Program-made: the position numbers and the translations under genes | Notes under the pieces: generated by a model | The model's database searches: none | The model's input: the letters and a program-made list of their open reading frames with translations, nothing else | What the model was told of the DNA's origin: nothing | Part shown: in pieces, positions 4,799 through 55,009 of the stretch | Layout of the letters: every line of letters starts with the position of its first letter | Numbering within the stretch: the stretch's first letter is position 1 | Assembly: GCF_006345805.1 (NCBI RefSeq) | Contig: NC_042998.1 | Coordinates: 34,534,001-34,598,000 of the forward strand | DNA: 64,000 nucleotides | Direction: 5' to 3' | From: Octopus sinensis | Lineage: Eukaryota

Positions 4799-4863
<65 letters not shown>

Positions 4864-5420
4864 TATGTATGTGTGCATGTATGAGTGTGTGTGTATATAT
4901 ATAAATGCATATATGTATATATATATATATAGGTGCATATATGTGTGTGTGTGTATATGTATATATGCGTGTGTGTGTGTGTGTATGTATGTACTCACAC
5001 ACATAGATGCTCATATGTGTTAGCATTTTCTATGGCTCCAGCAGTTTGATTTTTCTAATAATTATACACACACTCACACTTACACACATACACAAACCAA
5101 TATGTGCTTATACTTGAAACAATGGAGCGTGAGGGCATATGCTTATATATATATGCGAATGTATGTTATATGTACCTGTGTATATGTGTCTATATATATA
5201 TATATATTAGTATGTGTGCATCTGTCCTTCCAAGTATATATACATATATATTTTATGTATATATTTTATACATATATATTTTATATATATATGTATATAT
5301 TTTATACATATATATTTTATGTATATATTATATATATATATGTATATATTTTATACATATATATTTTATATATATATGTATATATAGCTGTGTGTTAATG
5401 CATATGTGTATGATTACAGC
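4690..5420. repeat. Compound (AT)n/(GT)n/(CA)n microsatellites; similar tracts at 2540-3610, 21420-21580 and 44590-44960
   Basis: Seen directly; source of the YI/CV/HT-rich ORF artefacts. Confidence 0.95.
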
Positions 5421-11639: not shown

Positions 11640-12300
11640 TAAAATAACACCGACATCTCATTTTAACAGATATATTTACCAAAATTACATAAAAATATCT
11701 TGAAATAACTAAAGATAAATTTATTCAAAAAAACGCAATTGGCTTCAACCACAGCCTCCATATGACTTTGGAATCGCCAGCAACTCTTCTGGATGATTTC
11801 CTTGTTTAAGTTGGTGAATGCTGCCATTATCCTTGCCTTCAGTTCATCTTTGGTGTTAGAAGGAGTTTTGTTGGTCTCTCGCTCAACTGTGCCCCACACA
11901 TAATAATTAAGGGAGTTGCAGTCTGGGGAGTTAGGCATGATGTGGTCGCAGAAATTTTCTGACAGCCATGACTGGGATCTCCTGGTATGGTGCAGAGTCC
12001 TGTTACCGGACATAGGGTCTTCCAGCAGCCACCCTCTTCACACAGGGCAGCCTCCGTATTGAGTCTGAGGCCATGTGGGAAAATGAATGGAGACATGCCT
12101 TCGCCATCATTAGTGATCAGTTCAAACACCATGATGTTGATTGGATGTTTGATTTTTATTACTCTCGGTACATGTCCTCAGATTGCATTGTCCTCAGATT
12201 GACACCCAAACACTCTGAAATGTTCGTATTAGAGAGCTTCTGGTGTGAATGCCAAGCAGTACAGCATGTCATTTCCAAATTTCTGGCAGTGTGAATTGCA
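11640..12300 (-). mobile_element. Decayed IS630-Tc1-mariner transposase (maT/DD37D-like), C-terminal half
   Basis: MVFELITNDGEGMSPFIFPHGLRLNTEA and PNSPDCNSLNYYVWGTVERETNK...ELKARI...FQSHMEAVVEAN (SPDLNPLDY-type motif); frameshifted. Confidence 0.75.
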
Positions 12301-14685: not shown

Positions 14686-15649
14686 CATATATATATATGT
14701 GTGTGTGTGTAAATATATATATATATATATGTACACACATACACACACGTATATATACATATATATACACACACACATACATAGAATAAGCTTCTTTCAG
14801 TTTCCACCAATCAAATCCACTCACAAGGTATTGGTTTGCCCAAGACCATAGCAGAAGACACTTGCCCAAGGTGTCACGCAGAAACCGTGTGGTTGTGGAA
14901 ACAGATCTATTACGACACAACCATGTTTGTGCCTTATTATCTGAAATCAGCTCTGACTTATATCAGTTTTAATCAGATGAATCATCACAGACATTTACTG
15001 GAAATGGTGTTAATATCGGAGAACATGGGAAAATGTCTGAATTCACAATTAGCAAACTCACCAGAACATATAAACTACATTGGCTTTGAAAGTTAGCATT
15101 GTTATTATAATTAGTGGGTCTTCTTTGATTGATTTTAATGAAAATACTGAACGTAATTAGAAAGCTTTTAAATATATATTACCCAAAATATCTTAAGTAT
15201 GGTCCTAAATTTTAATCTCCCATGATCAGTTAACATTTATCTTTCCATTAAGACATAGATTTAACAGCATCTCTAATTCAAAGTAGAATTTTGCACTATT
15301 CTACCAACATCTTTGAGACGTATTGCTTTAAAGTTTCCAGAAAGCCTCCTGCTAATCGACACTTCCACATTCGTTTACACTGAATGAAACAAATATTACT
15401 GTTTAATTTATGGCATTCATTCTTAACTTCATTTTGTTTATAAAGGGCAGACCCTATTCCCCACTAAAAGAACGAATAAAGAAAAAGCACAATTTCTTCA
15501 ATATTTGGTTATTACTATCTTCCATCAGCCTTACTCTCTCCATCACTTCTCACTCTTCTCCTCTGGTTCTTTTCCATATACTTCTACTACTTTCACCCCT
15601 TATTTATATCCCTATCTCTTTATCTTTTATTTGTTGCAAACTATCTACT

Positions 15650-15864
15650 TCTCTTCTCTCTTCTCTTCTACTTGTTTCAGTCATTTGACTGTGGCCATGC
15701 TGGAGCACCGCCTTTTAGTCGAGCAAATCGACCTCCAGGACTTATTCTTTGTAAGCCTAGTACTTATTCTCTTGGTCCCTTTGCCAAACCGCTAAGTTAC
15801 GGGGACGTAAACACACCAGCATCGGTTGTCAAGCGATGTTGGGGGGAAAAACACAGACATACAA

Positions 15865-15897
<33 letters not shown>

Positions 15898-16010
15898 CAT
15901 ATATACGACAGGCTTCTTTCAGTTTCCCTCTACCAAATCCACTCACAAGGATTTGGTTGGCCTGAGGCTATAGTAGAAGACACTTGCCCAAGATGCCACG
16001 CAGTGGGACT
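15650..16010 (-). mobile_element. SINE family 1 copy
   Basis: Reverse complement of the 22362-22790 consensus, 5'-truncated. Confidence 0.8.
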
Positions 16011-20404: not shown

Positions 20405-20660
20405 TGTCATTGTAGTGGTTAAGAGTGCGGGCTACTAACCCCAAGATTCCGAGTTCGAATCCAGGCAGTGACCTGAATAATAATAATAATAATGATAATA
20501 ATAATAACAATAACAACATCGAAAAATAGCTTAGGAATGAGAATCCAGGTTCAAAATTTCCCCCAAGACACCTGATGAAGGCTGGAGCATATATCAGCCG
20601 AAGCGTGTTAACAACAAACAAAACGAGGACAAATATCCGTCAAATGTAAATAATGTTAGA
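20405..20660 (+). mobile_element. Penelope 3' module copy (tRNA-like head, (TAA)n, hammerhead-like core)
   Basis: Same sequence as the 3' UTR of the 32395-32985 element. CTGATGA at 20572, stem ggctg/cagcc; the GAAAC part is mutated. Confidence 0.7.
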
Positions 20661-22329
20661 TATGATTGTCTTCATTTTTCTTATGTTACTTTTCTTACTG
20701 GTTTCAGCCAGAGTGGTCCACGGTGTCCTGAAATAATTAACTAAAAGACTTTTCCAGGTGGTGCTATTGAGTTAGTCATGGCCAAAACCAATCTAAGTTT
20801 TTATAATCAGAGACGTTTTGCTCTTGACTATTCTGCCTTATGCTTTTTATAAGTAGTGTATCCAATGTGTTATTCTTTTCCTTTCAAGGTGATGCTGTTT
20901 GATTTGAAAGGAAGTTGGCTGCCATTGCTAGCTGATCAAACATCTCTAAGTAGTTTCCTCATTTGCTGAGGCTTATAGCCTTTGGAAGTGGTTGTGGTTA
21001 TATTTATTGCATTCCTCAAACCAGGACACTTCATCTTACAGCGTATCCAGCAGCAATATTGGATTTTATTTATGGGGATTAAATGGTGCATGTATTTCTA
21101 TTACATGTGTGTGAAACATATTTGACAGAGAAAAAGAGAGAGAGAGAGAGAGAGTAAGCCATTTATGTAGCATCTTATATTTTAGCATCTACCTTTCCAT
21201 GCTTGTATAGCCATGGCAAAATTTGGTGAGGCAGATTTTCTACAATCAGATGTTCACCCTGTTTCCAATTCGTGTCCAAGCTAAGTAATATTTCCTCCAG
21301 CCCTTGAACATGAACAGCACAATGGCCTGACATGTTTTCTCTGCAGATTGCAAACAAACAATACTACTTATATTTCAATGACATTTCTTTACACTTGTCT
21401 TATGATGTGAAGACAAAGAAATACATATACACACACATATATATATGTATATACATACAAATTCAGATATATATATATACATATATACACATATGTACAT
21501 ATACATACATATGTGTGTATGTGTGTGTGTATATATATATATATACATACATAGGGTGTATAGGGTATATATATAATGTATAAAGAAAGGAAAAAAATTA
21601 TATAGGTGTAGACGATCTTTGGTACAAATCCAATATAAATTCTACAAATTGTATTGGAATTTAATTAATTCCAAAGGCAAAAACGAAAAACTTTTCTTGA
21701 AATAAAAATTAGATTCTTCATCAGGTATGAATAATTACAACCAACTAAAAATATGAAAATACCTTTTATAGCGCAGGCAGGAACAAACAATCAAATAATG
21801 ATAGAAGGAAAATTACCAGACTGCCAACCATTCAAAACAAGAGCAAAAAAAATATTGTACATATATATTCTTTACTTTGATTGTACAAGTGGACTTGGAT
21901 GTTTGACATCCCTTTGAAGGGATTTTTATATTCTATGATCGAATGCTACGCATCCATTTCCGAGTTTGACATATATATCATAATCATCATCATCATCGTT
22001 TAATGTCCGCTTTCCATGCTGGCATGAGTTGGATGGTTTCACTGAGAACTGGTGAGCCAGAGGCTGCACCAGGTTCGATTTGATCTGGCAGAGTTTCTAC
22101 AGCTGGATGCCCTTCCTAACGCCAACCACTCCGAGAGTTAGTAGGTGCCTTTATATGTCACCGGCATGAGAGCCAGTCAGGCAGTTCTGGCAACGACCAT
22201 GCTGGAAAGCTTGAATGTTGTTTTCCACGTGCCACCAGTACATGTGCCAGTAAGGTGATGCTGGCAACGATCACACTTGAATGGTGCTTTTCTCATGTCA
22301 CCGGCATGGGAGCCAATCCATGGGCCTGG

Positions 22330-22361
<32 letters not shown>

Positions 22362-22364
<3 letters not shown>

Positions 22365-22790
22365 CGCAGGAGTGGCTGTGTGGTAAGTAGCTTGCTAACC
22401 AACCACATGTTCCGGGTTCAGTCCCACAGTGTGGCATCTTGGGCAAGTGTCTTCTGCTATAGCCCCGGGCCGACCAATGCCTTGTGAGTGGATTTGGTAG
22501 GCGGAAACTGAAAGAAGCCTGTCATATATATGTATATATATATATATATATGTATGTATGTGTGTGTGTGTTTGTGTGTCTGTGTTTGTCCCCCTAGCAT
22601 TGCTTGACAACCGATGCTGGTGTGTTTACGTCCCTGTCACTTCGCAGTTTGGCAAAAGAGACCGGTAGAATAAGTACTGGGCTTACAAAGAATAAGTCCC
22701 GGGGTCGATTTGCTCGACTAAAGGCGGTGCTCCAGCATGGCCACAGTCAAATGACTGAAACAAGTAAAAGAGTAAAAGAGTATATATATA
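22362..22790 (+). mobile_element. tRNA-derived SINE family 1, full-length representative (about 20 full or partial copies in the window)
   Basis: A-box-like tggctgtgtggtaag, B-box-like ggttcagtccc, ccttgggcaagtgtctt, internal (AT)/(GT) microsatellite, 3' gtcaaatgactgaaacaagtaaaagag. Confidence 0.85.
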
Positions 22791-23419: not shown

Positions 23420-24030
23420 TTTAAGAGATGAGGAATTACGTTCATTATTTACATTTGATGGATATTTGTTATTACATCTTATTACGGAGATGTACTTGCA
23501 TAGCAAGTGACCTGATCTGAGATCGTGTGCTGGAACGAAAACAATTGCAGCGTGGAAAGTGTTTATAAGCCATTTAAGAAACACACAAAAACCGTTAGAT
23601 TCACTTCAACATTTAAATTTCTCATCTTGTTTGTTGTTAACGCAACGTTTCAGCTGGTATAGCCTCCAGCTTTAATCAGGTGTCTTGGGGAAATTTCGAA
23701 CCTGGGTTCTCATTCCTAAGGTATATTTCAATGTTATTATTATTATTATTATTATTATTTAGATATACCCACGAGCATATGGCATAGTGATTAAGAGTGC
23801 GGATTACTAACCCCAAGATTCCGCGTTCGATTCCAGGCAGTGACCTTAATAATAATAACAACAATAATAATAATAATAATAACATCGAAAATTACCTTAG
23901 GAATGAGAACCCAGGTTAGAAAATTTCCCCAAGACACCTGATGAAGGCTGGAGAGTATATCAGCCGAGACGTTGTGTTAACAACAAACAAGATGAGGACA
24001 AATATCCGTCAAATGTAAATAATGTAAAAA
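23420..24030. mobile_element. Head-to-head inverted pair of Penelope 3' modules, with a second repeat nested at about 23485-23620
   Basis: Minus copy at about 23620-23760 and plus copy at about 23770-24030. The nested gagatgtacttgcatagcaagtgacc...acatttaaattt repeat also occurs at 44290-44430. Confidence 0.7.
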
Positions 24031-25344
24031 TTAAAGAATCCACAATCAAATATAATACAATGCAAGCAAGCATATATAAATCATATCCGACAACAGATTT
24101 GTATTGGCTGCTATTTCTAGTAGGTTGTGCAACCATGTAGAGATCTCCTCGTTGTCTGGTTATCAATGTTTTGTGTCTGTATGAGTTGCACTGCAAGTAG
24201 TAAGATGCCTTACTGTGTTTTTGGATTGTGTCTGTTTGTCTTTCTATTATCTTACACTTGTTCCTGGCATTAGGCTGCGGCCATGCTGGGGCACCGCCTT
24301 GAAGAATTTTTAACTGAATGAATCGACCTCACTACTTATTGTATTTTTGGTTCTTATTCTGTCAGTTTCTTTTGTTGAACTGCTAAGTTATGGGGATGTA
24401 AACACACCAATACCTATTTCTTTACTACCCACAAGGGGCTAAACACAGAGAGGACAAACAAGGACAGACAAACGGATTAAGTCGATTATATCGACCCCAG
24501 TGAGTAACTGGTACTTATTTAATCGACCCCGAAAGGATGAAAGGCAAAGTCGACCTCGGCGGAATTTGAACTCAGAACGTAGCACAGTTGTCAAGCGGTG
24601 GTGGGGATAAATGCAGACACACACACACATATACAACGGGCTTCTTTCAGCTTTCGTCTACCAAATCGACTCACAAAGCTTTGGTCTGGCCAAGTAAAAG
24701 ACACTTGCTCAAGGTGCCACACAGTGGGACCGAACCCAGAACCATGCGGTTGAGAAGCAAATTTCTTACCAAACAGCCACACCTGCACCTATTGTATACT
24801 TGAAATGATGAGCAATTAAAATTCTTATATTTCACGAGGTTGTTTTGTGTACCTGTGTTTGTGTGTGTGTGTATATGTGCACACACGTGTGTGTACATGC
24901 ATGTGTGTCCTTGCCATTATCGTTTTCCCATCCACTTTCCCATGCTAAGACGGGTTGGGTATGTCTATTCCAGTACAGCATCCCACCATTTGTTGTGTTC
25001 CTTTGCCATCTCCTTTGCGGAGTTCAGCATCCCAAGATCAGCGTTCATCCACCATACAACTACTTTTATGAGCTTCCACCATTCAACATCTTCGAAATCT
25101 TGACATCACATTCTAATTGATTTCACCTGTGAACATTGATTAGCTTAACTGAATAACAAATTTCAGTGAATGATTAGTGAAATGTGTAATAGCTAATTTA
25201 TACTTACAATTACTATTACTTGCACCTGTGTTTGAAGTGAGGGATATTTCACCATTTCTTCAAAGAGTTTAATGAGCATGCAGATTGTTAATTTTTAAAT
25301 GATCATCATCATTATCATCATCATCCAGTTTCATCGGAGCCTTG

Positions 25345-26687: not shown

Positions 26688-27656
26688 TTAACTCTTTTGT
26701 TACCATATTTCTGTTGAGATGCTCTGTGTTTCTTTCAGTTAATTTTAAATATAACAAAGAATTTAGTAAAATAACTTAGTTATCATTCAGTTAGTGTTAG
26801 GAACATAAATTGTGACTACGGTTTGGTGGAAGATTTTAATTCAGAACTTTTGAAAACAAAACATCTGTACTACAGAGCCAGAGGTGGTTTCAGTCAGGTT
26901 GGTACCAAAAGGGTTAAATGCTAAAGTGTTAATCCCTCAACCTGCACAAAGGCACCTCCTTCAGTACTTTTCCATCTCCCAGCTGAGGGCTTTTTGTCTT
27001 GCAATTTACTTGGTGCCACAAACAAAGCACCAGTGTTAATGCCAGTGTTAACACCCAGTGCACTCCTTAACCCTTTCGTTACTGTATTTATTTTGAGATG
27101 CTTTGTGTTTCTTTCAACTAATTTTAAATATAACAAAGAATTTAGTAAAATAACTTAGTTATCATTCAGTTAGTGTTAGGAACACAAATTGTGACTAAGG
27201 TTTGGCGGAAGATTTTAATTCAGAATTTTTGAAAACAAGACGTTTGTTCTACAAAGCTAGAGGTGGTTTCAGCCGGGTTAAGAATTGTGTCTCTATTATA
27301 TATTTTAACCCTTTTGTTACCACATTTCTGTTGAGATGCTCTGTGTTTCTTTCAAGTACTTTAAATATAACAAAGAATTTAGTAAAATAACTTAGTTATC
27401 ATTCAGCTAGTGTTAGGAACATAAATTGTGACTAAGGTTTGGTGAAAAATTTTATTCCAAAACTTATGAAAGCAAGACATTTGCACTATAGAGCCAGAGG
27501 TGGTTTCAGTCATGTTGGTATCAAAAGGGTTAGGAATTGTTTCTCTATTATATATTTTAACCCTTTCTTTACCACATTTCTGTTGAGATGCTGTGTTTCT
27601 TTCAATTACTTTAACAAAGAATTTAGTTTCTACCAGGTTGGTAGTGAAAGGGTTAA
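26688..27656. mobile_element. Cluster of four piggyBac-type MITE copies
   Basis: TTAA|CCCTTT.GTTAC ... GTA.C.AAAGGG|TTAA termini. Copies at 26688-26917, 27067-27281, 27305-27533 and 27557-27656 (deleted); partial copies at about 26538 and 45672-45790. Confidence 0.65.
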
Positions 27657-27850: not shown

Positions 27851-28904
27851 TTTAATGATATTGGCTTAACTGAGAAGAATGAAGATCAAAGAAAACAAAA
27901 ATTGATTGATCAGAATGGTATGAAAGGGAAACAATGAATTAATTGTTGGATCAGATTTAGAATAGGGTTAGAAGTTTATGTATTCAATAAGAGAAGAAAT
28001 GGCCTTTTAGGCTTAAAAATAAATCTTCTATTTTTATAACTTTCTAACGTGACTTTTAGTGGGGAACCTTTTGTCGTCCAGGCAGACTGAGATTAAATTA
28101 AAGCAATGTATCTTACTTAGTAGCTGAACACTGGTTATAATAAGGTTTGGGTTCATAATCACATGTCCAGTTGTGCAGTATTTTTACCCCTAAGTGGACG
28201 CAGCTGACAAAAATGAGTTGTAGCTGCAATTGAAAGGGGCCAGCCTTGTCACATCCTGTATCTTGCCGAATCTCCCTGAGAACTATGTTAGGGGTATGCA
28301 TGCCTGTGGAATACTCAGCCACTTGCATGTTAATTTCATGGGCAGGTTGTTCCATTGTTCGGATCAACTGGGACCCTTGTCATTGTAACCAATGCAGAAG
28401 GAGGGGGCAACTTTTATTCCAATACCAATTTTTATTCAGTGAAGACAGAATCGGTGGAGTTGGTTTGTAAAAAGGAACCATGGAATGTCTGTCTTTTCTG
28501 TTTAACTTATTTCAGTCATTAGACTACGGCCATGAAATTGACCCACCACCCCAGTAAACTATAGAATAAGCCTGGAACTTATTCTAGTGGTCTCTTTTAC
28601 TGGACCACTAACTTACAGGGTCATAAACACAACACTTGTTATCAAGCGGTGGTTGGGGACAACAGCAGACACAGACATACACACATTCACACATACATAC
28701 ACAACAAGCTTCTTTCAGTTTCCGTCTACCAAATTCACTCACAAGGCTTTGGTTGGCCTAAGGCTATAGCAAAAGACACTTGCCCAAGGTACCACACAGT
28801 GGGACTGAACCTAGAACCGTGTACTATATAGCCATGCCTGCACCTATGCTTTTTTTTCCCCCTTTGGCAAATGTTTTAATTTCTAGACCTTTCAAACTTA
28901 CAGT

Positions 28905-29385
28905 TTAGAGATGAGGAATTATTTACATTATTTGCATTTGACGATATTTGTTCTCATCTTGTTTATTTTTAACACAATGTCTCAGCTGATATACCCTCCA
29001 GCTTTCATCAGCGGTCTTGGGGAAATTTCGAACCTGGGTTCTCATTCCTAAGGTATTTTTCGATACTATTATTATTATTATTCAGGTTACTGCTTGGAAT
29101 CGAACTCGGAATCTTGGGGTTTGTAGCCTGCGCTCTTAACCACTACAGGCATATGGTATAGTGGTTAAGATTCCAAGCTTGATTCCAGGCAGTGACCTGA
29201 GTAATGATAATAATGATGATAATAATAATAATAACATTGAAAAATACCTTAGGAATGAGAACCCAGGTTCAAAATTTCCCCAAGACACCCAATGAAGGCT
29301 GGAGGGTATATCAGCCGAAACGTTGTGTTAACAACCAACAAGATGAGGACAAATATCCATCAATTGTAAATAATGTACTTTCAAA
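28905..29385. mobile_element. Head-to-head inverted pair of Penelope 3' modules
   Basis: Minus copy 28905-29150 and plus copy 29150-29385, centred on ggcatatgg. Both carry mutated hammerhead cores. Confidence 0.7.
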
Positions 29386-30376
29386 CCTCCATTGACATAT
29401 AAAAATAGAACAAATGAAAATGAAATGAAAATTCAACAAACGAGACATTTCCAATATGGTCAATTGTCTGCATTCTTGTCACACTCTGAGCTATTGTATT
29501 GGTGAAAATCTGTGGAATGGGTAATTGATTCTTGCATTTCCTTTAAAATGCCATTTAGAACCATATTAATTACTATCCTTTTATTAATGTTGCATTGTTT
29601 ATTATTGTTATTATTGTTATTTCTAATAATTCTAGAACAAGACTTTATGATTATCTTGTCATTAATCAAAACTCCGTTGTGACTTTAGTGCAAAGGGCAC
29701 ATTTATTTACTCTTTCTGTGACCTTTTATTATTTCAAAAGTTTCTTTATAAATTCTTCTTCATCTCTCATTCAGATTATTTCTAAAAATACCTTTGGGTT
29801 TATTGCTTTCTTGAGTTTCTTTAATTACTCTCGGCTTGACTGTTTTATAATTTTACTGACGGCCGGAGTTTTAATAGTTCATGATTTGATTAAAATGAGT
29901 GTATATAACGAAGAGAAACAATAAGATATCCTCTTTTGATAGTTTCGTTTATCTCTGAACTGTATCCATGGAGTGTATAAATTTCAAATTATTCTCCATC
30001 TTCCCCTTTTGTCTGTAGAAATGCAATTGTTTGTGTTTTTGTTTTTGCTTGTCCCAAAGTTTATATTCTAAATATACAACTCTTGAGTCAGTGATTTAGA
30101 TCTTTTGCTTGTTTCAGTCATTAGGCTGTGGCCATGCTGGGGCACCACCTCAATGAATTTTAGCAAAGTGACCAACCCCAGTATCTATTTTTTTTTTAAA
30201 CCTTGTACTTGTTCTTATTGACCCTTTTTTTATGTTGAATTGCTTGGTTACAGGGAAGCAAACACACCAACACCAGTTTTCAAGTAGTGATGGGAGACGA
30301 GCACAGGCATACACACACACGTGTGTGTGTATATGTATATATATATATATAAGTAAATTAGAGATAGGTTCTCATT

Positions 30377-30459
30377 CTTTCCTGATGAGAAGATTGCATT
30401 TTATACTGTTTATTCCTTTGGAATAAAACCAATGTTGTCTTTGAAACATATGTCGAAAG
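30377..30459 (+). ncRNA. Type I minimal hammerhead ribozyme motif, near-intact
   Basis: ctttc-CTGATGA-gaagattgcatt...aatgttgtcttt-GAAAC-atat-GTC-gaaag. Stem I is ctttc/gaaag. Stem II has 11 of 12 positions paired, plus an inner tttattcc/ggaataaa hairpin. Stem III is 2 bp with palindromic ACATATGT. GUC cleavage triplet ends at 30454. Confidence 0.75.
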
Positions 30460-30679
30460 TAAAAGAATTTGAATAGCATCTGCGTTCAACTCCATTTATT
30501 TACTTATACTACACAAATTACTGTACATTAACCCGGAGTTTCTACCTTTGAATAGGTCACTTCATCCGTGTTACTTGCGTGAATTTTGCTACCCTGGTAA
30601 CTGTTTATTGAATTTTCCATGTTAACAGTAAACAAAGGATAATTCATTCATCCATTTATATATATATACATATATAAAT

Positions 30680-31050
30680 ATATATGACTGGCTTTTTCAG
30701 TTTCTGCTTACCAAATCCACTCACAAGGCTTTGGACAGTTGTAATACAGGGTGTTCAAAAAGTCTCTCTACAGTGAAGGAAGTGCCTAGAAAGTGCTCAC
30801 ACGGCAGTAAAAAAGAAATTAAATTTTATGTATTAAAAATGAAGGACAACATTTTCAACACCTTATATAGTTTTTTTAAAGTATTCTAAAGTCTAATATA
30901 TTCTTTTGTAGTCTTATAACCATCTTATAAATAATTATTTTGCAATAAAATACTTACTGTGGAGAGATTTTAGAAGACACTTGCCCAAAGTGCCACACAC
31001 CATGATTGAACCAGGAACCATGTGGTTGGAAAGCAAGCATCTTATCACAC
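30680..31050 (-). mobile_element. SINE family 1 5' half, interrupted by a mariner MITE
   Basis: ttttcagtttctgcttaccaaatccactcacaaggctt ... gaagacacttgcccaaagtgcc...aagcaagcatcttatcacacag. Confidence 0.75.
30747..30980 (+). mobile_element. MITE / internal-deletion derivative of the 48552 transposon family, inserted in a SINE
   Basis: Same left TIR, TA|cagggtgttcaaaaagtctctctacagtg. Shares internal cac.ggcagtaaaaaagaaattaaattt with about 48993. Degenerate right TIR actgtggagagatttt. Confidence 0.6.
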
Positions 31051-31979
31051 AGATACGCCTACACTTAGATGTTAAACATTTTTTTAAAAATATTTTTCCA
31101 AAACTACTGAGTTAAGCATCAATCTAGTTGAATTAATTGAAATCCAAATGATTAATATTTATTTATACTCAATATTTATTGATTTCATAAATTTTAGTTT
31201 CGAATTATTCATTGTCAATATTATATTTTGCTTCCCTTTATTGCAATGTTGACATCGCTTAGACAAGATATTGCTATGGCTATAATCTATAACAAATCAC
31301 AATAAAGCAGTCTATATATATCTGATCTAATTGCCTTTATTTTGTTCAAGCTTACATTGATTTGTCAAATAGTTCAGATTGTTGCATCGCATTCTCCACC
31401 CAACCAATATTAATTCGTTTAAAATAATTAGTATACATTTAATTTAAACATAAAACATTATTTCCAGTAAAACACACAATGTCTACAATTTATGTATAAT
31501 ATATACACCCCTCATGTTTAAAAATATTAAAAGTGTTTTTTTTATTTTCATTTTTATAATATTTTTATTGGAAAACTTACAACAGAGGTTTATTGGAAAC
31601 AGTATTCTTCTGTGACTGCTCTTCATAGAATTTACTTAAGTGGATATTTCTATAATCATCATCATCATCATCAATGTCTGTTTTCCATGCTGGCGTGGGT
31701 TGGACATTTTGACAGGAGCTGGCAAGACCAGGAGCCATGCCAGGCTCTGTGGTCTGTTTTCGCTTGGTTACTATGGCTGGATGCCCTTCCTAATGCCAAC
31801 CAGAGTGTATTAGATGCATTATACATGGAACCATCATCAGTGCTTCTTATGTGGCACCAGTACCGTATATTTTTAGACTGTTAATTGCAGATTTATGCAA
31901 TTAATTCAGAAGTTTTTTTTCTTTTTTTTGCAACATATATAAATAAATGATTATAACTGTTTTTTTTCTTCTTCTTCAG

Positions 31980-32028
31980 GTATAAAGGATTTATGAAAGA
32001 TTGCCCAGATGGCAAGCTGACGTTAGAG
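31980..32028 (+). CDS. Internal 49-nt coding exon of a neuronal calcium sensor family gene (EF-hand 1 region); subfamily unresolved
   Basis: Acceptor ttataactgttttttttcttcttcttcAG (branch-like ataac plus long pyrimidine tract) and donor GAG|GTAAGA. Phase 2 start, phase 0 end. Translation (TG|G=W) Y K G F M K D C P D G K L T L E matches the family hallmark WYKGFxxDCPxGxL, including the Cys-Pro that disables EF-1. Confidence 0.9.
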
Positions 32029-32394: not shown

Positions 32395-32985
32395 TCTTGT
32401 TTGTTGTTAACACAACTTTTCGGCTGATATAACCTAAGCCTGAGTTCTCATTCCTAAGGTATTTTTCAATGTTATTATTATTATTAAGGTCACTGCCTGG
32501 AATCAAACTCAGAATCTTGGTGTTAGTAGCCCGCACTCTTAACCACTACACCATATGCCCGTGGGCAATTATGGAATGAATTTTAGGGCTTATAAATCTA
32601 ATATTCTCCTATCCTTCCTTAATACCGGTTCCCATATGTTATTCATATCTGCACTCGGTCTGCTTAGGAAGTTGTTGTGTCCTAACATATATGCTGCTTC
32701 TTTTAGTTCTCGTATTTTCCATTGGTGTTCTCTGTCTATTATTTTAACTTCATCCCACAGGGGGAGGTGGTCTCCATTTTTCCATACATGATCAGCTATA
32801 CCTGATTTACCAATACCTCCTCGTGTCACAGCTTTGCGATGTTCCTCTACCCTTATTTTGAGGGGCAGCATGTTTCACCTTTGTATGACCTACCAAAGCT
32901 GCAAACAAGATGAGGACAAATATCCAGCAAATGTAAATAACATAAATAATGTACATAATTCCTCATCTCTTAAATATAGAAAAGC
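32395..32985 (-). mobile_element. 5'-truncated Penelope-like retroelement: GIY-YIG endonuclease C-terminus, 3' UTR with tRNA-like segment and broken hammerhead, and an inverted terminal-repeat piece at 32900-32985
   Basis: ORF 32590-32871 (LKIRVEEHRKAV...KSGIADHVW...WDEVKIIDREHQWKIRELKEA) is a typical PLE GIY-YIG tail. It runs directly into the gtagtggttaagagtgcgggctactaac module. An inverted copy of the repeat end sits at the 5' junction, the pLTR-like PLE hallmark. Confidence 0.8.
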
Positions 32986-37095: not shown

Positions 37096-38389
37096 CTTCT
37101 CTGAGGAAGACAAACTTAATAAGATTAACAGTTAATGAAACAAGAATAGGAAGCGTATTTGTCCACTTGGAAGTCGATGAAAGACATATGCCATGATTTT
37201 GGTTGGCGTTTGTATTTCATGATGTTGAAAGCTTTAGTAATTTAGCATCCTGTTAGCACATCTCTCATTGTTGTTATTGCAATTAATTTGTTCCTTATTC
37301 CAAAACTCTTAATGAGGATTAGCTTGTAATTCAAGCCTCATTTTTGTTGCAATGGTTTTATTTCTCTTTTATTTCAGCGTGAAAGACAAATTGGATTTGA
37401 TAATTTGATATGCTAACAGATATTAATTATCTCCCCCTTTCATTGTTATTGTTAACACGTTCTTGCTTTCCACAGCTGAATTCATTGATAGATATACATC
37501 TTTCTCACATGAGAACCAGTATTTATAACATTACTAACCCTTGACCTCAATCTTTTAATTATTGTTATTTTATCACTGCCTGACAATTACCTGCACAGCA
37601 GAAGGTAATCTTCTTTCCGTTCGTTCGAACAACTTTATTAACTGGTTTCAATTCTTTATTATCGTGTGTGTATGTGTGTCCGTGCCTCTCTGCCTATGTG
37701 TAACCCTGGTTTCAAACCTGCTGTCGTTGTTTCTGTCACTTCTCATTGCATCTTGTAAATTATTGGTTTGACGAATAGAGTGTAATAAAATAAGTGCCAG
37801 GCTGAAATAAGTATTGGGGGGGGGGGTGATATGATCCATCATCATCATCCTCATCATCATCATATGTCCATTTTCCATACAGGCATGGGTTGGACAGTTT
37901 GACAGGAGGAGCTAGCAAGGCCAGGAGCCATACTTGGTACTGTTGTCTGTTTTGGCATGGTCTTTACAGCTGGATGCCTTTCCTGGTGCCAACCGCTTTA
38001 CAGAGTGTACTGGGTGCTTTGAATGTGATACTGGCACAGGTGCCTTTTTACATAGCACCATCTGACAAATAGAGTTTTCCTGAAACACTATGAAATTATT
38101 TGTAAAATGTAATTCAGACGGTAATTAAATGGAGGAAGCAAACCAAAATCAGTCGATAGAATAAAGAACACCTAAAACACTCGAGGAATAAACATTTTAG
38201 TAACAACAACAATAATAATAGTAATAATAATAATAAATATACTTCTGATAAAGATCTGAAATTAGCCATGGGGTATGGTTGAACACAATCTATACATAAT
38301 TTCTCTGAGCAGTTGAGACTCTTAAAAATTTTAATTTGTCGATACTAATTGGAGTATGTTTTACATTTATTTTGTTATTTTTCTCTTCG

Positions 38390-40429: not shown

Positions 40430-41730
40430 GTGGAGAGGGCCAGTCAATTAGATCAATCCCAGTATATAACCGGTACTTAATTTATCGACCCTGAAAGGAT
40501 GAAAGGCAAAGTCAACCTCAGCCGAATTTGAACTCAGAACATAAAGACAGACGAAATACCTATTTCTTTACTACCCACAAGGGGCTAAACACAGAGAGGA
40601 CGAACAAGGACAGACAACTGGATTAAGTCGATTACTTCAACCACAGTGCGTAACTGGTACTTAATTTATTGACCCCGAAAGGATGAAAGGCAAAGTCAAC
40701 CTCAGCCGAATTTGAACTCAGAACGTAAAGACAGACAAAATACCGCTAAGCATTTCACCTGGTGTGCTAACGTTTCTGCCAGCTTGCCGCCCTATTCACA
40801 CATATATCTAAAACTACATACATACACAATCACGCATACATGCTCTCATGTAGATTTAGATATATATATGTGTGTGAATAAGGCGTTGAGCTGGCAGAAA
40901 CGTTACCATGCTGGGCAAATGCTTAGCAGTATTTCATCTGTGTTTATGTTCTGAGTTCAAATTCCACCAAGGTTGACCTAGCCTTTCATCCTTTCGGTGT
41001 TGATAAATTAAGTACCAGTTGCATACTGGGGTTGATCTAATTGACCGCCCCACTGCCCCCAAATTTCAGGCTTTGTGTCTAAAGTAGAAAAGGATGTTAT
41101 TCTTAAGGCAGCCAGCTGTCAGAAAAGTTAGCACGCCAGAGAAATTGCTTAGCTGTATTTTGTCAGTTTTTACGTTCTGAGTTCAAATTCTACCAAGGTC
41201 AACTTTGCCTTTCATCCTTTCAAGGTTGATAAATTAAGTACCAGTTGCATCCTGCAGTCGATCTAATTGACTGGTCCCTCTCCCCAAAAATTTCAGGCCT
41301 TGTGCCTAGAGTAGAAAAGATTATAGTAAGGCAGTGAGCTGGTAGAAACGTTAGCACACTGGGCAAAATGCTTAGCGGTATTTTGTCTGTTTTTACATTG
41401 TGAGTTCAAATTCCGCCGAGGTCGACTTTGCCTTTCATCCTTTCGGGGTCGATAAATTAAGTACCAGTTACGCACTGGGGTCGATGTAATCGACTTAATA
41501 CCTATGTCTGTCCTTGTTTGTCCGCTCTGTGTTTAGCCCCTTGTGGGTAATAAAGAAATAGGTATTTTGTCTGTTTTTACATTCTGAGTTCAAATTCCAC
41601 TGAGGTCGACTTTGCCTTTCATCTTTTCAGTGTCAATAAATTAAGAACCAGTTGCATACTGGGGTCAATCTAATCAACTGCCCTCCCTCCCCTAAAATTT
41701 CAGGCCTTGTGTCTAAAGTAGAAAAGAATA
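40430..41730. mobile_element. SINE family 2 cluster (minus copies 40430-40790, plus copies 40870-41730)
   Basis: At least six core repeats, including a variant that re-enters its own sequence (taaagaaataggtatttt.tctg). Confidence 0.8.
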
Positions 41731-48105: not shown

Positions 48106-48551
48106 CAGATCGTGTATTTAAATACAAGTTGTTGGTAAAGTAAATACAATAGAGTTATTTTTCCCTCCGGGAATGTTGTACAGTGTGTGTGTGTGTGTGT
48201 GTGTGTGTATGTAGTTTATGCCAGTGTGTGGGATGTGCAAATAGTAACTTGATTTAATGATATTGCTCCATTCCCCCCACCTCACCTTATAAAAAGGATA
48301 TTTCCATGGCTCAGGTTCTACCTAAAAGTACAGTTTCTATTTGTAGTTCTGAAGATGTGGCCAAATGCTTACAATTTTCTGCTTTTTTAACCTTCTCCGT
48401 TACATTTAATGATTGTGTTACTATAGATACTACAGAACTAACTATGCTTTATAGATTTGCTGCCTCTAAGAATTACCATTTTGGTTATTTTTCTGCTTCT
48501 TTTTATGGTATATTTCTTCCTCGTAAATGTAATACAATAATTTGTAGATTA

Positions 48552-49455
48552 CAGGGTGTTCAAAAAGTCTCACCACAGTGAGAATTTTTTTCATCCTGTG
48601 CGTGCGCAACATGGATATTACTGCGTGAGTGGCCGGGTGTCACCACTGTCTTCTCAATCGTTGTGTACCCCGCAGCGTGTCGACATGCTAACCATTGAAG
48701 AACGTACGTTTTGAGTTGAATGGATGTTTCGAGCTGGAAACAAATACTCAGATACTGTGAAACAGAAGTTCAGGGAAACTTTTCCAAATACTGTTGATCC
48801 ACATCGTGACACTGTGAGGGATTTGATATGAAAATATAGAAACACAGGTTCAGTGGAAGACGCAGCAAGAAGCGATAGGCCTACTGTTCTTTCAGACGAA
48901 ATACTCTCCAATATTTCTGATAAACTGTTGGCAAGCCCGTCAAAGTCCTTACACAAATTGTCACAGGAAAGGGAAATCAGCCTAGGAAGCGTTCACATGG
49001 CAGTAAAAAAGAAATTAAATTTCTTTCCATACAAAGTGCTGACCAAGTGCTGAATTGAAGACTACGGATCATGTTAAAAGGCTTCATTATTGTCATTGGT
49101 TCCAAAACTTTGTTGCCGAAAAAGGTATAGAAGTGCTGGGTGGGTGTTTTTTTCACTGATGAGGCTTGGTTTCATCTGTCGGGACACATAAATTCATAAA
49201 ACACAAGGTTATGGACCATTGAGAATCCACATGTTACGCATGAAAAACCTCTGCATCCCGAAAATGTTGCAGTATGGATAACAATTTCAAGAAAGCATAT
49301 TGTGGGACCTGATATTTTTTTTGCTAAGACACCATCAACACCAAGAGACATTGCTCAAATGTTGTCTCTCCATTTCTAGGCCAACTCACTAAAAGTGAAA
49401 TTAATAATGCATACTTTCAGCAAGATGGAGCTACAGTACATACTTCACACATCAT
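48552..49455 (+). mobile_element. Decayed IS630-Tc1-mariner transposon: left TIR and most of the transposase
   Basis: TA|CAGGGTGTTCAAAAAGTCT terminus. The frameshifted ORF gives RNTGSVEDAARSDRP, FFTDEAWFHLSGHINS, ENPH..HEKPLHP and YFQQDGATVHTS. Confidence 0.8.
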
Positions 49456-50657
49456 GCTCAAGTGGTGCTTGTTCAAATTCTGCCAAGGTCAGCCTTGCCT
49501 TTCTTCCTTTTGGGGTCAATAAAATAAGGACCAGCTGAGCATTGGGGTTGTTGTAATTGACTTACCCCCCCCCAAAAAAAATTGCTGGCCTTGTGCCAAA
49601 AATGGAAACCATTATTTACCCTTTCAGTTTGTGGCATCTTTCAGTGTTTTTTTTTGTAATTTTATTTTATTTCTACGGCTTTTTTTATTAATTTATTGTT
49701 GCTTTTTTCTGATAAAATTCTCGTTTTCACCCAGAAATTTTCGGCATGTAGTCGAGAATGTTTTCACAGTTTCTGTTGTCTGTAAACAGATCCTTGTCTT
49801 GACAAGTTTGTGGGTGCTGATGTCATCGAACTGTCCAACCTATGCCAACATAAAAAAAGAATGAACATTAAGTGATGACGATGGTGCCAATCATGATCGT
49901 TATCGGTAAAACATTCCAATACTAGTTATTTCAAACATTGGCTTCCATGCCAGTGGCACATAAAAAGCACCAACCATTCGTGGCCATTGCCAGCCTACCC
50001 TGGCACCTGTGCCAGAGTAGGCCGGTGGCAAATATAAAGCACCATCCATATGTGGCCGATGCCAGTGCCGCCTTGACTGGCTTCTGTGTCAGTGTCACGT
50101 AAAAACCATCAACCGATCGTGGCCATTGCCAGCCTCCCCTGGCACCTGTGCAGGTGGCACTTAAAAAGCACCTACTACACTCACGGAGTGGTTGGTGTTA
50201 GGAAGGGCATCCAGCTGTAGAAACACTGCCAGATCAGACTGGAGCCTGGTGCAGCCTCCTGGCTTCCCAGACCCCGGTCGAACCATCCAACCCATGCTAG
50301 CATGGAAAATGGATGTTAAACAATGATGATGATATCTTCTATTCACACAAGGCCCTCATCTTCCATATTTGTGTTTGTAAGCAGAAAGTAAACACCTGTT
50401 CCTCCATAATGGCTCTCAGTTTCATAATAGTCCATATCTAGTTTGCGTATTTTTTTATTCGTTTCAGTCATTTGACTGCGGCCATGCTGGAGCACCACCT
50501 TTAGTCAAACAAATCGATTTATTCTTTGTTAGCTTAGTACTTATTCTGTTGGTTTCTTTTGCCAAACTACTAAGTTACAGGGACATAAACACACCAACAT
50601 CAGTTATCAAGCAATGGTCGGGGGACAGACACATACATATGTGTGTGTATATATATA

Positions 50658-50697
<40 letters not shown>

Positions 50698-52534: not shown

Positions 52535-54254
52535 CTGAGGGTGTGTGTATGTAAACTGGCAGAACTTCTGAAGTTCACAACTGATTTTCTCCACACTTGG
52601 AACATGTATTACTTTTGTTCCAGAAATGGTTTTACACTCTTAAAATTTTTCATATGAGTAATGGGGCCCCTGTGGGACAGAAAACCCCCTTTCCTGGTGT
52701 ATGTATGACTCCTGCATGGTCCACACATTGCTTCTGTTCAAACTGGAAAATAACAGCTTCTGAAATGATAAAAGTAAGTTGTATTAAATGGATGAACCGA
52801 TGTAGACTTCAGACAGTATTGTCGAAGTGGTAGCAATAATACCTTGTTCCCATAGTACCACAGGTAGCAATTTGTTGGAATAAAAACATTCATCTGTAAA
52901 AACCTTGCCTAAACTGACTTCGCTTGTGTTTGTGCCACATAAAAAGCACCAAGTCCACTCTGTTGAGTGATTGGTATTAGGGAGGGCATCCAGCTGTAAA
53001 AACCCTCCCAAAACAGTCACAGAAGTCTGGTGCAGGCTTCTGCCTGGCCAGCTCTTGTGAAACTGTCCCACCCATGCTAGCATGGAGAGCAGATGTTAAA
53101 CAATGATGTTGATGATGATATAGTTAAATAAGATTGGGGTAGAAACCTTGTAGAATGCTAAGCAAAGTTCATCCACAGCTATTGGCTATCTGATGTCATC
53201 ATGCAGTTGAACTGCTCCTGCTACAGGATATACATCAAGAATTCCATAGTAACCATAGAGTTTAGATAAGCAGATAAATAATAGAAAATGGAATGAAGTC
53301 ATGTGATTATTATCATGTGTCCAAAGTATTGTGAAAGACATAAGGTAATTTAGTTCCTTCCCAGAAATAAACACTTGGTAAGTACTAAAATGGTCAGCCT
53401 TCATCACTTTATTATCTCTAAATGGTTAATTTTATTCTTCATTTTGTTTTGTACTTTCTTACTTATAATCTGACCATGAAGATAGAATTGTAATTTAAAG
53501 TCAACCTGGCCCCCTTTGCATGTCTGTTTCTTTGTTTCTGTATTTTGAATTTCAATTATAAATGTATTTTACTTGGGTTTAGTTTGTCTGTAAACTGCTG
53601 AAAACGTGACACTGCTTTGAGTATGCATTCTCACACTGAATAAAATAATGTTAGGATCTAATAAAGGACATATTTAAACAATCACCTGAGGAGGGGTATT
53701 TTGTACTTTGGATGCAAGATAATGATTACACAACATCTCACCAATGTACTACACGTATAACAATGTGTCGAAACAATTGTAGTGATTGAATACAGAATAC
53801 CATTCACTCCATTTTGTATCATATATCTATTTATATATCTGTGTGTGTGTATGTGCATGCACATACATACACCCATACACACATATATATAATTGTGATG
53901 TTCTGGAAATGTACTGAACTTAGTTGATGCATTTATTACTTTCTTAGGCTTAGATTTATCTTTTTGTTTTCTTCTGTTCTTTTCAGTTTCTTTATTGTGT
54001 TCTGTTTGTTTTCTTTTTTTATTTTGTTGGTGTTTTCTTTTAGCATGACATTTTGCTGGATTGCTACCATTAATGTCACTTTTTTTTCCTCTCTCATTTG
54101 CCTTCTTTATCCATAAGCAATTCTGTTTCTCAAAGTACTTTTTCTAATTATAACTTAGCCAATGCGTGTTCATTGTTCAGCATCTATATTTAATCATTTG
54201 CTTGTGTTTCCTCTCTCACCATATTCTATAAGTCAGTCTGCCGATGGCTAGGAT

Positions 54255-54470
54255 TCTTATTTACATTTGACGGATATTTGTCCTCATCTTGTTTGTTGTT
54301 AACACAATGTTTCGGCTGATATACCCTCCAGCCTTCATCAGGTGTCATGCGGAAATTTCAAACCTGAGTTCTCGTTCCTAAAGTATTTTTCGACATTATT
54401 ATTATTATCATTATTATTACTACACCATATGCTCGTGGGCATAGTGGTTAAGAGCGTGGGCTACTAACCC
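54255..54470 (-). mobile_element. Penelope 3' module with hammerhead core one substitution from the family consensus (54301-54347)
   Basis: Minus strand reads gacac CTGATGA a ggctg gagggtatat cagcc GAAAC att gtgtt; the consensus has GAAAC gtt gtgtt. Confidence 0.7.
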
Positions 54471-55009
54471 TTTCCTAATGCAATACACCTTTTCTGCCCC
54501 TCAATACTACTCCCACCCCCACCCCAATGGTGGTGTCTTGTTCTGCAAACTTACTTGCAGAATCTTTAGAATGCCAGGCAAAATGCTTAGCAGCATTTTG
54601 TCCATCTTTACATTCTGAGTTCAATTTCAGTTGAGGTTGACTTTGCCTTTCATCCCTTTCAGGGTCAATAAAATAAGTAGCAGTTGGATACTGGGGTCAA
54701 TGTAATTGACTTACTCCACTCCCCCCACAAAAATTCATGCCTTGAGAGAAGACCTGTCAAGCTGACCAAAATCACCATTGTGGCAGGTACCAGTGTCACA
54801 CAAATGGCACCCATGCCAGTGGAATGTAGAAGCACTTGTTACACTCTCAGAGTGGTTGGCATTAGGAAGGGCATCCAGCTGTAGAAAACCATGCCAAATC
54901 AGACTGGTCTCTGGTGCAGCTTTCCAGCCCTAGTCAAACCGTCCGACCCCTGCCAGCATGGACAATGGACATTAAAGGATGATGATATACCTCTAAGTAT
55001 AAAAGTACT

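What the first reader, a model, noticed from the sequence alone, without database searches (positions are those of the whole stretch)
30377..30459. Near-intact hammerhead ribozyme on the sense strand of the neuronal calcium sensor intron, 1.5 kb upstream of the EF-1 exon
Seen: all core nucleotides (CUGAUGA, GAAA, GUC) in order, a 5-bp stem I, an extended stem II with an inner 8-bp hairpin, and a 2-bp stem III with self-complementary ACAUAUGU. The only clear deviation is G-U instead of G-C at 10.1-11.1. Established: minimal type I hammerheads with palindromic stem III are typical of Penelope-like elements and usually cleave as dimers; intronic self-cleaving ribozymes are known in vertebrate genes (e.g. 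CPEB3). Inference: this copy differs from the other hammerhead family here, is far better preserved, and would be transcribed with the NCS pre-mRNA, so it could be a co-opted intronic ribozyme affecting splicing or turnover of a neuronal gene. It could equally be a recent passive insertion.
Basis: partly seen in the sequence, partly recalled or inferred. Interest (0 to 1): 0.7.

Follow-up and report, generated by a model that had tools for sequence, protein, structure and literature searches.

The report
Lone hammerhead-like motif in an intron
A single sequence matching the hammerhead self-cleaving RNA consensus lies in an intron of a calcium-sensor gene, inside a ~300-base insertion in an older repeat, and is most likely a transposon leftover or a chance match rather than a ribozyme the gene uses.

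Summary
The motif is at 30377-30459 (+) exactly as described. It has all 15 core bases, a 5-bp helix I, a 54-nt imperfect helix II with G.U at its base, a palindromic ACAUAUGU helix III, and a cleavage site after C30454. It is on the sense strand, 1.5 kb upstream of the window's only calcium-sensor exon.

A match this good is rare per window: 1-10 of 3000 shuffles, and 0 of 2519 permuted-core decoys. That rate still predicts tens of chance matches in a 2-3 Gb genome.

No Rfam hammerhead model reports it, even when only 106 nt are searched.

It sits in a ~304-nt, 32% GC stretch that occurs once in the window and interrupts the (TA)n tract of an old SINE-like repeat. The stretch has no terminal inverted repeats and no poly-A. 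Its size, GC content, helix III shape and AT-rich target fit a solo retrozyme or Penelope-like fragment. The lack of a tandem partner, the very long helix II and unremarkable folding do not fit.

As a monomer, helix III is essentially unformed. Two copies would fold into the textbook dimeric hammerhead, but there is no second copy.

I found no evidence for co-option. Genome copy number and octopod orthologues could not be reached with these tools. Verdict: ordinary passenger or chance motif, low interest.

The parts
30377..30381 (+). Helix I, 5' strand (CUUUC); pairs with 30455-30459
   Evidence: Read. Pair probabilities are 0.78-0.85 in the 83-nt fold.
30382..30388 (+). Core box C3-A9 (CUGAUGA)
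30389..30442 (+). Helix II: a 54-nt imperfect hairpin. G10.1.U11.1 wobble at the base, 6 bp, a U.U mismatch, 5 bp, an 8x3-nt internal loop, then 8 bp (UUUAUUCC/GGAAUAAA) closed by a UUU loop.
   Evidence: sub-fold -11.5 kcal/mol. This is far longer than the 4 bp of canonical helix II or the 7-8 bp of PLE helix II (PMC4209133).
30443..30445 (+). Core G12 A13 A14
30446..30453 (+). Helix III, ACAUAUGU: A15.1-U16.1 and C15.2-G16.2 closing an AUAU loop. It is a perfect 8-nt palindrome that can pair with a second copy.
   Evidence: Pair probability is 0.01 as a monomer. Two copies co-fold into the dimeric hammerhead (-34.0 kcal/mol against 2 x -14.0).
30454..30454 (+). C17, the predicted cleavage site (3' of this base; new 5' end at G30455)
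   Evidence: Position derived. Cleavage itself was not tested.
30455..30459 (+). Helix I, 3' strand (GAAAG)
30352..30655 (+). The ~304-nt, 32% GC insert that carries the motif. It occurs once in the window, has no terminal inverted repeats and no poly-A, and is flanked on both sides by (TA)n.
   Evidence: Absent from the other SINE-like copies (alignment A1). No other copy in the window. Ends examined. GC content and folding.
30100..31100 (+). Host: an old SINE-like repeat copy, about 70% identical to at least 9 other copies in the window. It is interrupted by the insert at 30352-30655 and by a second insert at 30735-30970.
31980..32028 (+). The only neuronal-calcium-sensor exon in the window (G + YKGFMKDCPDGKLTLE), bounded by AG and GT.
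   Evidence: The same 16 residues and exon borders occur in two distant assemblies.

Best explanation
The motif is a solitary, dimer-type (short palindromic helix III) type-I hammerhead-like sequence. It arrived as a passenger on a ~300-bp piece of DNA inserted into the (TA)n tract of an older SINE-like repeat in this intron.

The most likely source is a hammerhead-bearing retroelement of the Penelope-like / non-LTR retrozyme kind. In that case the insert is a solo monomer or a truncated end of such an element.

It is transcribed with the pre-mRNA because it is on the sense strand. With one copy only, an AU-only 2-bp helix III, a G.U pair at the base of helix II, and a 54-nt helix II that cannot make the usual loop-loop contacts, it is expected to cleave slowly or not at all. 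It is expected to have no role for the host gene.

What is shown: the anatomy, the insertion, the single copy in the window, and the folding.
What is inferred: the retroelement origin and the low activity.
For: - The full core and all three helices are present. A match this good is rare per window.
- Helix III has the AC-NNNN-GU palindromic form seen in cloned invertebrate retrozyme hammerheads: coral ACAGUACUGU and mussel ACGCGCGU (supplement of PMC7229834; text).
- The motif lies in a discrete 304-nt, 32% GC insert. This is within the 150-450 bp, <45% GC range of non-LTR retrozyme monomers (PMC7229834).
- The insertion point is a (TA)n tract. PLEs show an insertion bias for microsatellites including (TA)n (PMC8557442), and a PLE endonuclease cuts AT-rich DNA (PMC11167929).
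- The insert has no terminal inverted repeats and no poly-A. That argues against a MITE or an ordinary SINE.
- Cephalopod genomes do hold type-I hammerheads: 235 Rfam Hammerhead_1 hits in the giant squid (PMC6962438).
- Two copies co-fold into the canonical dimer, while monomer helix III has probability 0.01.
- A natural hammerhead with a mismatch at the base of helix II and a 2-bp helix III (axolotl Amex2) cleaves only 22% in 1 h as a monomer.
Against: - No Rfam hammerhead model reports the motif, even at E<=10 on 106 nt.
- Helix II is 54 nt, against 4 bp in canonical and 7-8 bp in PLE hammerheads (PMC4209133).
- There is no tandem partner, no second copy and no reverse transcriptase or GIY-YIG open reading frame in the window.
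- The insert is not unusually self-paired: z = -1.0 as a circle, against -2.3 to +0.8 for seven neighbouring control stretches. Retrozyme circles are described as highly self-paired.
- The 83-nt motif folds no better than shuffles (z = -1.55).
- Copy number in the genome, which would settle the origin, could not be measured.
Confidence: 0.5

Rival explanations
1. Chance match. The inserted DNA has nothing to do with hammerhead-bearing elements, and an AT-rich stretch happens to satisfy the relaxed hammerhead descriptor. It is not a ribozyme and never was one.
For: - No Rfam hammerhead model reports it.
- The per-window chance rate of 0.03-0.3% for an equally good hit scales to tens of hits per 2-3 Gb genome. 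Loose hits occur in 6% of shuffled windows.
- All stems are short and AU-rich, and CAUAUG palindromes are common next to (TA)n.
- Folding energy is ordinary.
- The literature warns that relaxed minimal-motif searches mostly returned false positives (PMC6155905), and that min-HHR searches gave an 'overwhelming number' of hits (PMC4209133).
Against: - 0 of 2519 permuted-core decoys reach the strict level on the real window.
- Several features outside the bare consensus agree with real invertebrate type-I hammerheads: the AC-NNNN-GU helix III, the 5-bp helix I, and a possible internal loop plus closing stem beyond helix I.
- The ~300-bp, low-GC insert at (TA)n is what a retrozyme or PLE fragment would look like.
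Confidence: 0.4
2. Co-opted intronic ribozyme. The motif self-cleaves in the calcium-sensor pre-mRNA and modulates its splicing or turnover, as proposed for the amniote intronic hammerheads.
For: - Sense strand, inside an intron, intact core.
- There is precedent in RECK, CTCL and DTNB (PMC6155905).
- Some hammerheads with a 2-bp helix III cleave as monomers, for example mussel at kobs ~0.1 per min.
Against: - It lies in a nested insertion inside a repeat.
- There is no partner for dimer folding, and monomer helix III probability is 0.01.
- The G.U base pair and the 54-nt helix II leave no canonical loop-loop contacts.
- There is no hammerhead in the 10 kb upstream of the same exon in the distant relative L001.
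- Retrozymes are reported as depleted from introns in Xenopus (bioRxiv 10.64898/2026.07.22.740005). That suggests such insertions are tolerated at best.
- From established work on ribozymes placed in introns (exon tethering; only fast-cleaving ribozymes abort processing), a slow hammerhead should have little effect. This rests on my own knowledge and was not checked here.
Confidence: 0.04
3. Intronic C/D-box snoRNA. UGAUGA would be the C box next to a short terminal stem.
For: UGAUGA follows a 5-bp terminal stem. Rfam gives a weak alignment to a fungal C/D snoRNA model (Afu_328, 14.9 bits against a gathering score of 70, E=2.8).
Against: There is no CUGA D box before the 3' strand of the stem; the sequence there is AUGUC|GAAAG. 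The Rfam score is far below threshold. Nothing reaches the gathering score of any snoRNA family.
Confidence: 0.01

Closest known systems
Type-I hammerheads of metazoan non-LTR retrozymes (coral, mussel, axolotl; Cervera & de la Pena 2020, PMC7229834)
   Same: Type-I topology, full 15-nt core, and a helix III of 2 bp closing a palindromic tetraloop (AC-NNNN-GU). The carrier sequence is ~300 bp with low GC. Activity is helped by dimer formation through helix III. A weak base pair at the foot of helix II also occurs in axolotl Amex2.
   Different: Retrozymes occur as tandem repeats in many copies, their helix II is ~4 bp with a small loop, loops 1 and 2 often interact, and the circular RNA is highly self-paired. 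Here there is one copy in 64 kb, a 54-nt helix II, ordinary folding, and no Rfam Hammerhead_1 match.
Minimal hammerheads in the pseudo-LTRs of Penelope-like elements (Cervera & de la Pena 2014, PMC4209133; Craig et al. 2021, PMC8557442)
   Same: Short helix I (4-5 bp), a helix II longer than canonical, dimer-type architecture, low intrinsic activity, and insertion into microsatellite or AT-rich targets.
   Different: PLE hammerheads usually lack helix III altogether, have a 7-8 bp helix II with an unpaired base at its 5' end, and lie next to a reverse transcriptase / GIY-YIG reading frame or a second pLTR. None of these is seen here.
Conserved intronic hammerheads of amniotes (HH9/HH10; RECK, CTCL, DTNB; reviewed in PMC6155905)
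   Same: Type-I hammerhead on the sense strand of an intron of a protein-coding gene, thought to derive from retroelement hammerheads.
   Different: Those are ultraconserved across classes, have canonical helices and loop-loop contacts, and are captured by their own Rfam models. This motif is in a nested repeat insertion, has no such contacts, is not matched by any model, and has no conservation evidence.
CPEB3 intronic ribozyme (HDV-like)
   Same: A self-cleaving RNA in an intron of a neuronal gene.
   Different: It is a different ribozyme class and fold, and it is conserved across mammals. It is only a conceptual parallel.

Membership tests
Hammerhead ribozyme, type I | Conserved core in order: C3U4G5A6N7G8A9, G12A13A14, A15.1-U16.1, H17 | tested here: met
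   CUGAUGA, GAA, A..U and C17 at 30382-30454.
Hammerhead ribozyme, type I | Three helices around the core, with helix I open | tested here: met
   Helix I is 5 bp and helix II has a 6-bp proximal plus distal pairs, both with probability >0.78. Helix III is only 2 bp with probability 0.01 in the monomer; it forms in the two-copy co-fold.
Hammerhead ribozyme, type I | G10.1-C11.1 pair at the base of helix II | tested here: not met
   It is G.U (G30389, U30442). Natural exceptions exist (U.U in axolotl Amex2), but they go with weaker cleavage.
Hammerhead ribozyme, type I | Match to a curated covariance model (Rfam Hammerhead_1, _3, _II, HH9, HH10) | tested here: not met
   No hammerhead hit at gathering score or at E<=10 on 1.2 kb, in the 150 listed matches of the 64-kb scan (24 lower-scoring not shown), or on 106 nt.
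Hammerhead ribozyme, type I | Loop 1 - loop 2 tertiary contacts of full-length natural hammerheads | tested here: inconclusive
   A 54-nt helix II puts its loop far from helix I. A possible internal loop and closing stem beyond helix I appears only in the MFE, not in the centroid. No 3D test was possible.
Hammerhead ribozyme, type I | Site-specific self-cleavage 3' of H17 | not testable with these tools
   Needs in vitro transcription or RNA end mapping.
Non-LTR retrozyme | Head-to-tail tandem repeats, each unit carrying a hammerhead | tested here: not met
   No tandem array at the site, and no second copy in the window. Solo monomers are described, however.
Non-LTR retrozyme | Unit of about 150-450 bp with low GC (<45%) | tested here: met
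   The insert is 304 nt with 32% GC.
Non-LTR retrozyme | Unit RNA highly self-paired as a circle | tested here: not met
   Circular fold z = -1.0, with 64% of bases paired. This is within the range of neighbouring control stretches.
Non-LTR retrozyme | Many copies in the genome | not testable with these tools
   No cephalopod genome was reachable. Every route tried found no relative of the insert.
Penelope-like element pLTR hammerhead | Linked to a reverse transcriptase / GIY-YIG reading frame or a paired pLTR | tested here: not met
   No long open reading frame of that kind among the 21 ORFs >=110 aa. The insert is only 304 nt between SINE halves.
Penelope-like element pLTR hammerhead | Insertion into microsatellite or AT-rich target without a clear target-site duplication | tested here: met
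   (TA)n on both sides. Literature basis.
Penelope-like element pLTR hammerhead | Helix II of 7-8 bp with an unpaired 5' base; helix III absent or minimal | tested here: not met
   Helix II is 54 nt. Helix III is minimal, which does fit.
Domesticated intronic hammerhead (HH9/HH10-like) | Sense strand of an intron | tested here: met
   The exon at 31980-32028 is on the + strand.
Domesticated intronic hammerhead (HH9/HH10-like) | Positional and sequence conservation across species | tested here: inconclusive
   Only two distant relatives were retrievable. Their introns are not alignable, and L001's 10 kb upstream holds no hammerhead.

The most novel reading that the evidence does not exclude
The motif is an active, octopod-conserved intronic hammerhead, domesticated from a retrozyme or PLE insertion, that cleaves the calcium-sensor pre-mRNA and tunes its output in neurons. 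It would be the first invertebrate counterpart of the amniote RECK/CTCL/DTNB intronic hammerheads, with an unusually long helix II.
Probability: 0.04. Interest if true: 0.7.

Novelty: new member of a known kind. Interest (0 to 1): 0.2.

Why it matters
If the motif is only a passenger or a chance match, it matters little. Isolated hammerhead-like motifs are expected by the hundreds in repeat-rich animal genomes.

Two small points are useful. First, the case shows how a consensus-perfect hammerhead can pass a descriptor and still fail every covariance model. Second, the local context (a nested insert in a (TA)n tract) is more informative than the motif itself.

It would matter only if the insert proved to be conserved and catalytically active across octopods. 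That would extend ribozyme domestication in introns beyond amniotes.

Tried and rejected
- **Rfam at four depths**: no hammerhead hit was reported. The matches listed were microsatellite-driven miRNA noise.
- **C/D snoRNA reading:** rejected because there is no D box.
- **MITE or DNA-transposon reading of the insert:** no terminal inverted repeats beyond the (TA)n flanks.
- **Retrozyme 'rod-like circle' test:** not met.
- **Other hammerheads in the window.** With a one-mismatch core, only two poor candidates appeared (38242-38317 + and 32665-32798 -, 3-bp stems). I also found the four-copy repeat with CTGATGA..GAAAC boxes. It has no convincing helix I and shares no sequence with the focal insert.
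- **Reaching cephalopod DNA.**
  - Exact look-ups of four window ORFs found nothing.
  - A homology search with the 45-aa ORF covering the motif found no candidates.
  - A search of 1.84 billion representatives with the 50-aa frame from the rest of the insert gave 0 hits.
  - Exact-pattern scans of viral and metagenome contigs gave 0 hits.
  - My first exon-based protein search used insect-like flanks that I had typed in, and it returned only insect-like exon ORFs.
  - A second search with the exon repeated three times found the same exon in two assemblies. Both are distant: 80-82% nucleotide identity in the exon, introns not alignable, and for L001 none of the window's repeats.
- **tRNA scan of the window:** nothing. 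The 'tRNA-derived' label for the other repeat family is only an inference from a T-arm-like GAGTTCGATTCC.

Full report
**1. Observation**

The + strand at 30377-30459 reads CUUUC CUGAUGA [54 nt] GAA ACAUAUGU C GAAAG.
- the 15 core bases in order;
- a 5-bp helix I (30377-30381 with 30455-30459);
- a long helix II (30389-42) that starts with a G.U wobble and ends in an 8-bp hairpin, UUUAUUCC/GGAAUAAA;
- a helix III of two pairs whose eight bases are a perfect palindrome;
- a GUC triplet that puts the predicted new 5' end at 30455.

A descriptor I wrote for the type-I topology finds this site and no other on either strand of the window. With one core mismatch allowed, only two poor 3-bp-stem candidates appear.

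The calcium-sensor exon G+YKGFMKDCPDGKLTLE lies at 31980-32028 (+) between AG and GT. It is the only such exon in the 64 kb. The motif is therefore intronic, on the sense strand, 1.5 kb upstream.

**2. Is it more than chance?**

I ran 3000 dinucleotide-preserving shuffles of the window:

| Criterion | Shuffles with a hit (of 3000) |
|---|---|
| Loose hit | 179 |
| Helix I >=5 and helix II >=5 | 10 |
| Helix I >=5 and helix II >=6 | 4 |
| As above, plus a short helix III | 1 |

As a control that keeps the real sequence, I ran 2519 decoy descriptors with permuted core boxes. They gave 35 loose hits and none at the strict levels.

For one window the motif is therefore unlikely by chance, at about 0.03-0.3%. 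The same rate predicts on the order of 10-50 equally good chance matches in a 2-3 Gb genome.

Against membership, no Rfam hammerhead model is reported in any search. This holds at gathering score, at E<=10 on 1.2 kb, among the 150 listed of 174 matches for the whole window, and on just 106 nt.

The 83-nt fold is not unusually stable (z = -1.55), nor is the 149-nt context (z = -0.49).

**3. Context**

The motif is not in unique intron sequence.
- Positions 30100-30351, 30656-30734 and 30971-31100 are three pieces of one old SINE-like repeat. It is about 70% identical to at least nine other copies in the window, and those pieces are contiguous in the other copies.
- The family carries an internal (CA)n(TA)n tract.
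- In the focal copy that (TA)n tract is split by about 304 nt (30352-30655), which contains the motif near its 5' end. A second, unrelated insert lies at 30735-30970.
- The 304-nt insert has 32% GC and no other copy in the window. It has no terminal inverted repeats beyond the TA flanks and no poly-A.

So the motif came in with a discrete insertion that is younger than the SINE copy.

**4. What the insert resembles**

Published descriptions give the yardsticks.
- Canonical metazoan type-I hammerheads have a 6-bp helix I and a 4-bp helix II. Their helix III is 1-2 bp, capped by a small palindromic loop, and they act as dimers. PLE minimal hammerheads have a 4-5 bp helix I, a 7-8 bp helix II and low activity (PMC4209133).
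- Non-LTR retrozymes are tandem units of about 300 bp with <45% GC. Invertebrate versions have a 2-bp helix III with a tetraloop (PMC7229834).
- Cloned coral and mussel units read GAAAC-AGUACU-GUC and GAAAC-GCGC-GUC. The focal GAAAC-AUAU-GUC has the same form.
- PLEs insert preferentially into microsatellites, including (TA)n (PMC8557442). A purified PLE enzyme cuts AT-rich DNA (PMC11167929).
- The giant squid genome has 235 Rfam Hammerhead_1 hits (PMC6962438).

The insert's size, GC content and target site, and the shape of helix III, all fit a solo retrozyme unit or a truncated PLE end.

Several things do not fit:
- the 54-nt helix II;
- the absence of a tandem partner or of any reverse transcriptase / GIY-YIG frame in the window;
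- the ordinary self-pairing of the unit (circular fold z = -1.0, controls -2.3 to +0.8);
- the Rfam miss.

**5. How it would behave**

In the monomer, helices I and II form with probabilities of 0.78-0.97, but helix III has probability 0.01. The minimum-energy fold instead pairs A6U7G8 of the core with CAU of helix III. The hammerhead secondary structure costs -11.1 kcal/mol against an MFE of -14.0.

Two copies co-fold into the textbook dimeric hammerhead with an 8-bp intermolecular helix III (-34.0 against -28.0 for two monomers). There is no second copy nearby, so dimer formation would need two transcripts.

The published analogues are informative:
- the mussel monomer with a 2-bp GC helix III cleaves at about 0.1 per min;
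- axolotl Amex2, with a 2-bp helix III and a mismatch at the foot of helix II, cleaves 22% in an hour as a monomer and far better as a dimer;
- PLE minimal motifs barely cleave.

The focal motif combines the weak features: an AU-only helix III, a G.U foot, and no plausible loop-loop contact. I therefore infer slow or no cleavage. From established work on ribozymes engineered into introns (my own knowledge, not checked here), slow cleavage has little effect on splicing.

**6. Co-option**

I could not reach any close relative. Exact look-ups and homology searches with window ORFs found nothing. Collection scans found nothing either.

Using the exon as bait, I retrieved the same 16-residue exon, with the same borders, from two assemblies. 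These are L001 (ENA ERZ25073293, 20 kb) and L002 (Logan SRR27941445, 1 kb). Both are distant:
- the exon is 80-82% identical at the nucleotide level;
- the introns are not alignable;
- in L001, the two repeat families tested and the 304-nt insert give no match;
- neither locus has a hammerhead, even by a very relaxed descriptor or by Rfam.

This rules out deep positional conservation, but it says nothing about octopods.

A 2026 preprint reports that retrozymes are depleted from introns in Xenopus. That is the opposite of what routine co-option would predict.

**7. Verdict**

| Reading | Probability |
|---|---|
| Passenger hammerhead-like motif delivered by a ~300-bp retrozyme/PLE-type insertion, weak or dead, no host role | about 0.5 |
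| Pure chance match inside unrelated inserted DNA | about 0.4 |
| Co-opted intronic ribozyme | about 0.04 |
| C/D snoRNA (no D box) | about 0.01 |

Under the two leading readings the biological conclusion is the same: there is nothing here that the gene is likely to use. The closest known kinds are retrozyme and PLE hammerheads. Amniote intronic hammerheads (PMC6155905) are the proper precedent for the co-option idea.

Membership in the hammerhead family is met for the core and the topology. It is not met for G10.1-C11.1 or for the covariance models, and it is untested for catalysis. Interest is low. The decisive tests are genome copy number, the orthologous site in other octopods, and monomer versus dimer cleavage in vitro.

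Noticed in passing
window 20440-20700 (+), 23806-24070 (+), 54200-54473 (-), 28870-29143 (-): Four copies of a short repeat with a T-arm-like GAGTTCGATTCC head, a (TAA)n tract and a ~150-nt tail. They all carry CTGATGA-A-GGCTG(9-nt loop)CAGCC-GAAAC, that is, both hammerhead core boxes and a good helix II with an extra unpaired A. There is no convincing helix I. Helix III appears only in a type-III reading (7 bp and GUC in copy 54341; AUC in the other three). No hammerhead is among the 150 Rfam matches listed for the window, and ARAGORN finds no tRNA. A SINE tail borrowed from a hammerhead-bearing element is a possibility I did not test.
   Followed up: partly
window 22327-22771 (-), 63456-63857 (+), 15664-15956 (+), 24249-24791 (+), 50453-50669 (+) and others: An abundant old SINE-like family (consensus starts CTTTTACTTGTTTCAGTCATTTGACTGTGGCCATGCTGGAGCACCGCC) with an internal (CA)n(TA)n microsatellite. 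There are at least nine copies in 64 kb, about 70% identical to the focal copy. The microsatellite is the insertion point of the hammerhead-bearing insert.
   Followed up: partly
window 30735-30970: A second nested insert in the same SINE copy. It shares 32-43-nt pieces (91-94% identity) with 48550-48581 and 48980-49022, so it belongs to another repeat family.
   Followed up: no
window 11663-12013 (-): A 116-aa ORF that looks like the C-terminal end of a mariner-type transposase (...YVWGTVERETNKTPSNTKDELKARIMAAFTNLNKE...). The identification is by eye only.
   Followed up: no
window 10-1257; 27067-27614; 40879-41494; 60527-61081: Tandem arrays of 305 bp x4 (95% matches), 237 bp x2.2, 223 bp x2.7 and 66 bp x8.4. 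None contains a hammerhead by my descriptor, and none has an Rfam match at gathering score.
   Followed up: partly
window 31980-32028; L001 10138-10200; L002 641-703: The 49-nt exon encoding YKGFMKDCPDGKLTLE is identical at the protein level, with the same splice borders, in two distant assemblies whose introns are otherwise not alignable. The window holds only this one exon, so the introns on both sides exceed 30 kb.
   Followed up: yes
window-wide, e.g. 14688-14760, 4831-4931, 21467-21546: (CA)n/(TA)n microsatellite hairpins give dozens of sub-threshold Rfam 'miRNA' matches (mir-297, mir-3149, mir-466, mir-1277), up to 61 bits against gathering scores of 81-100. These are composition artefacts, not miRNA genes.
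   Followed up: no
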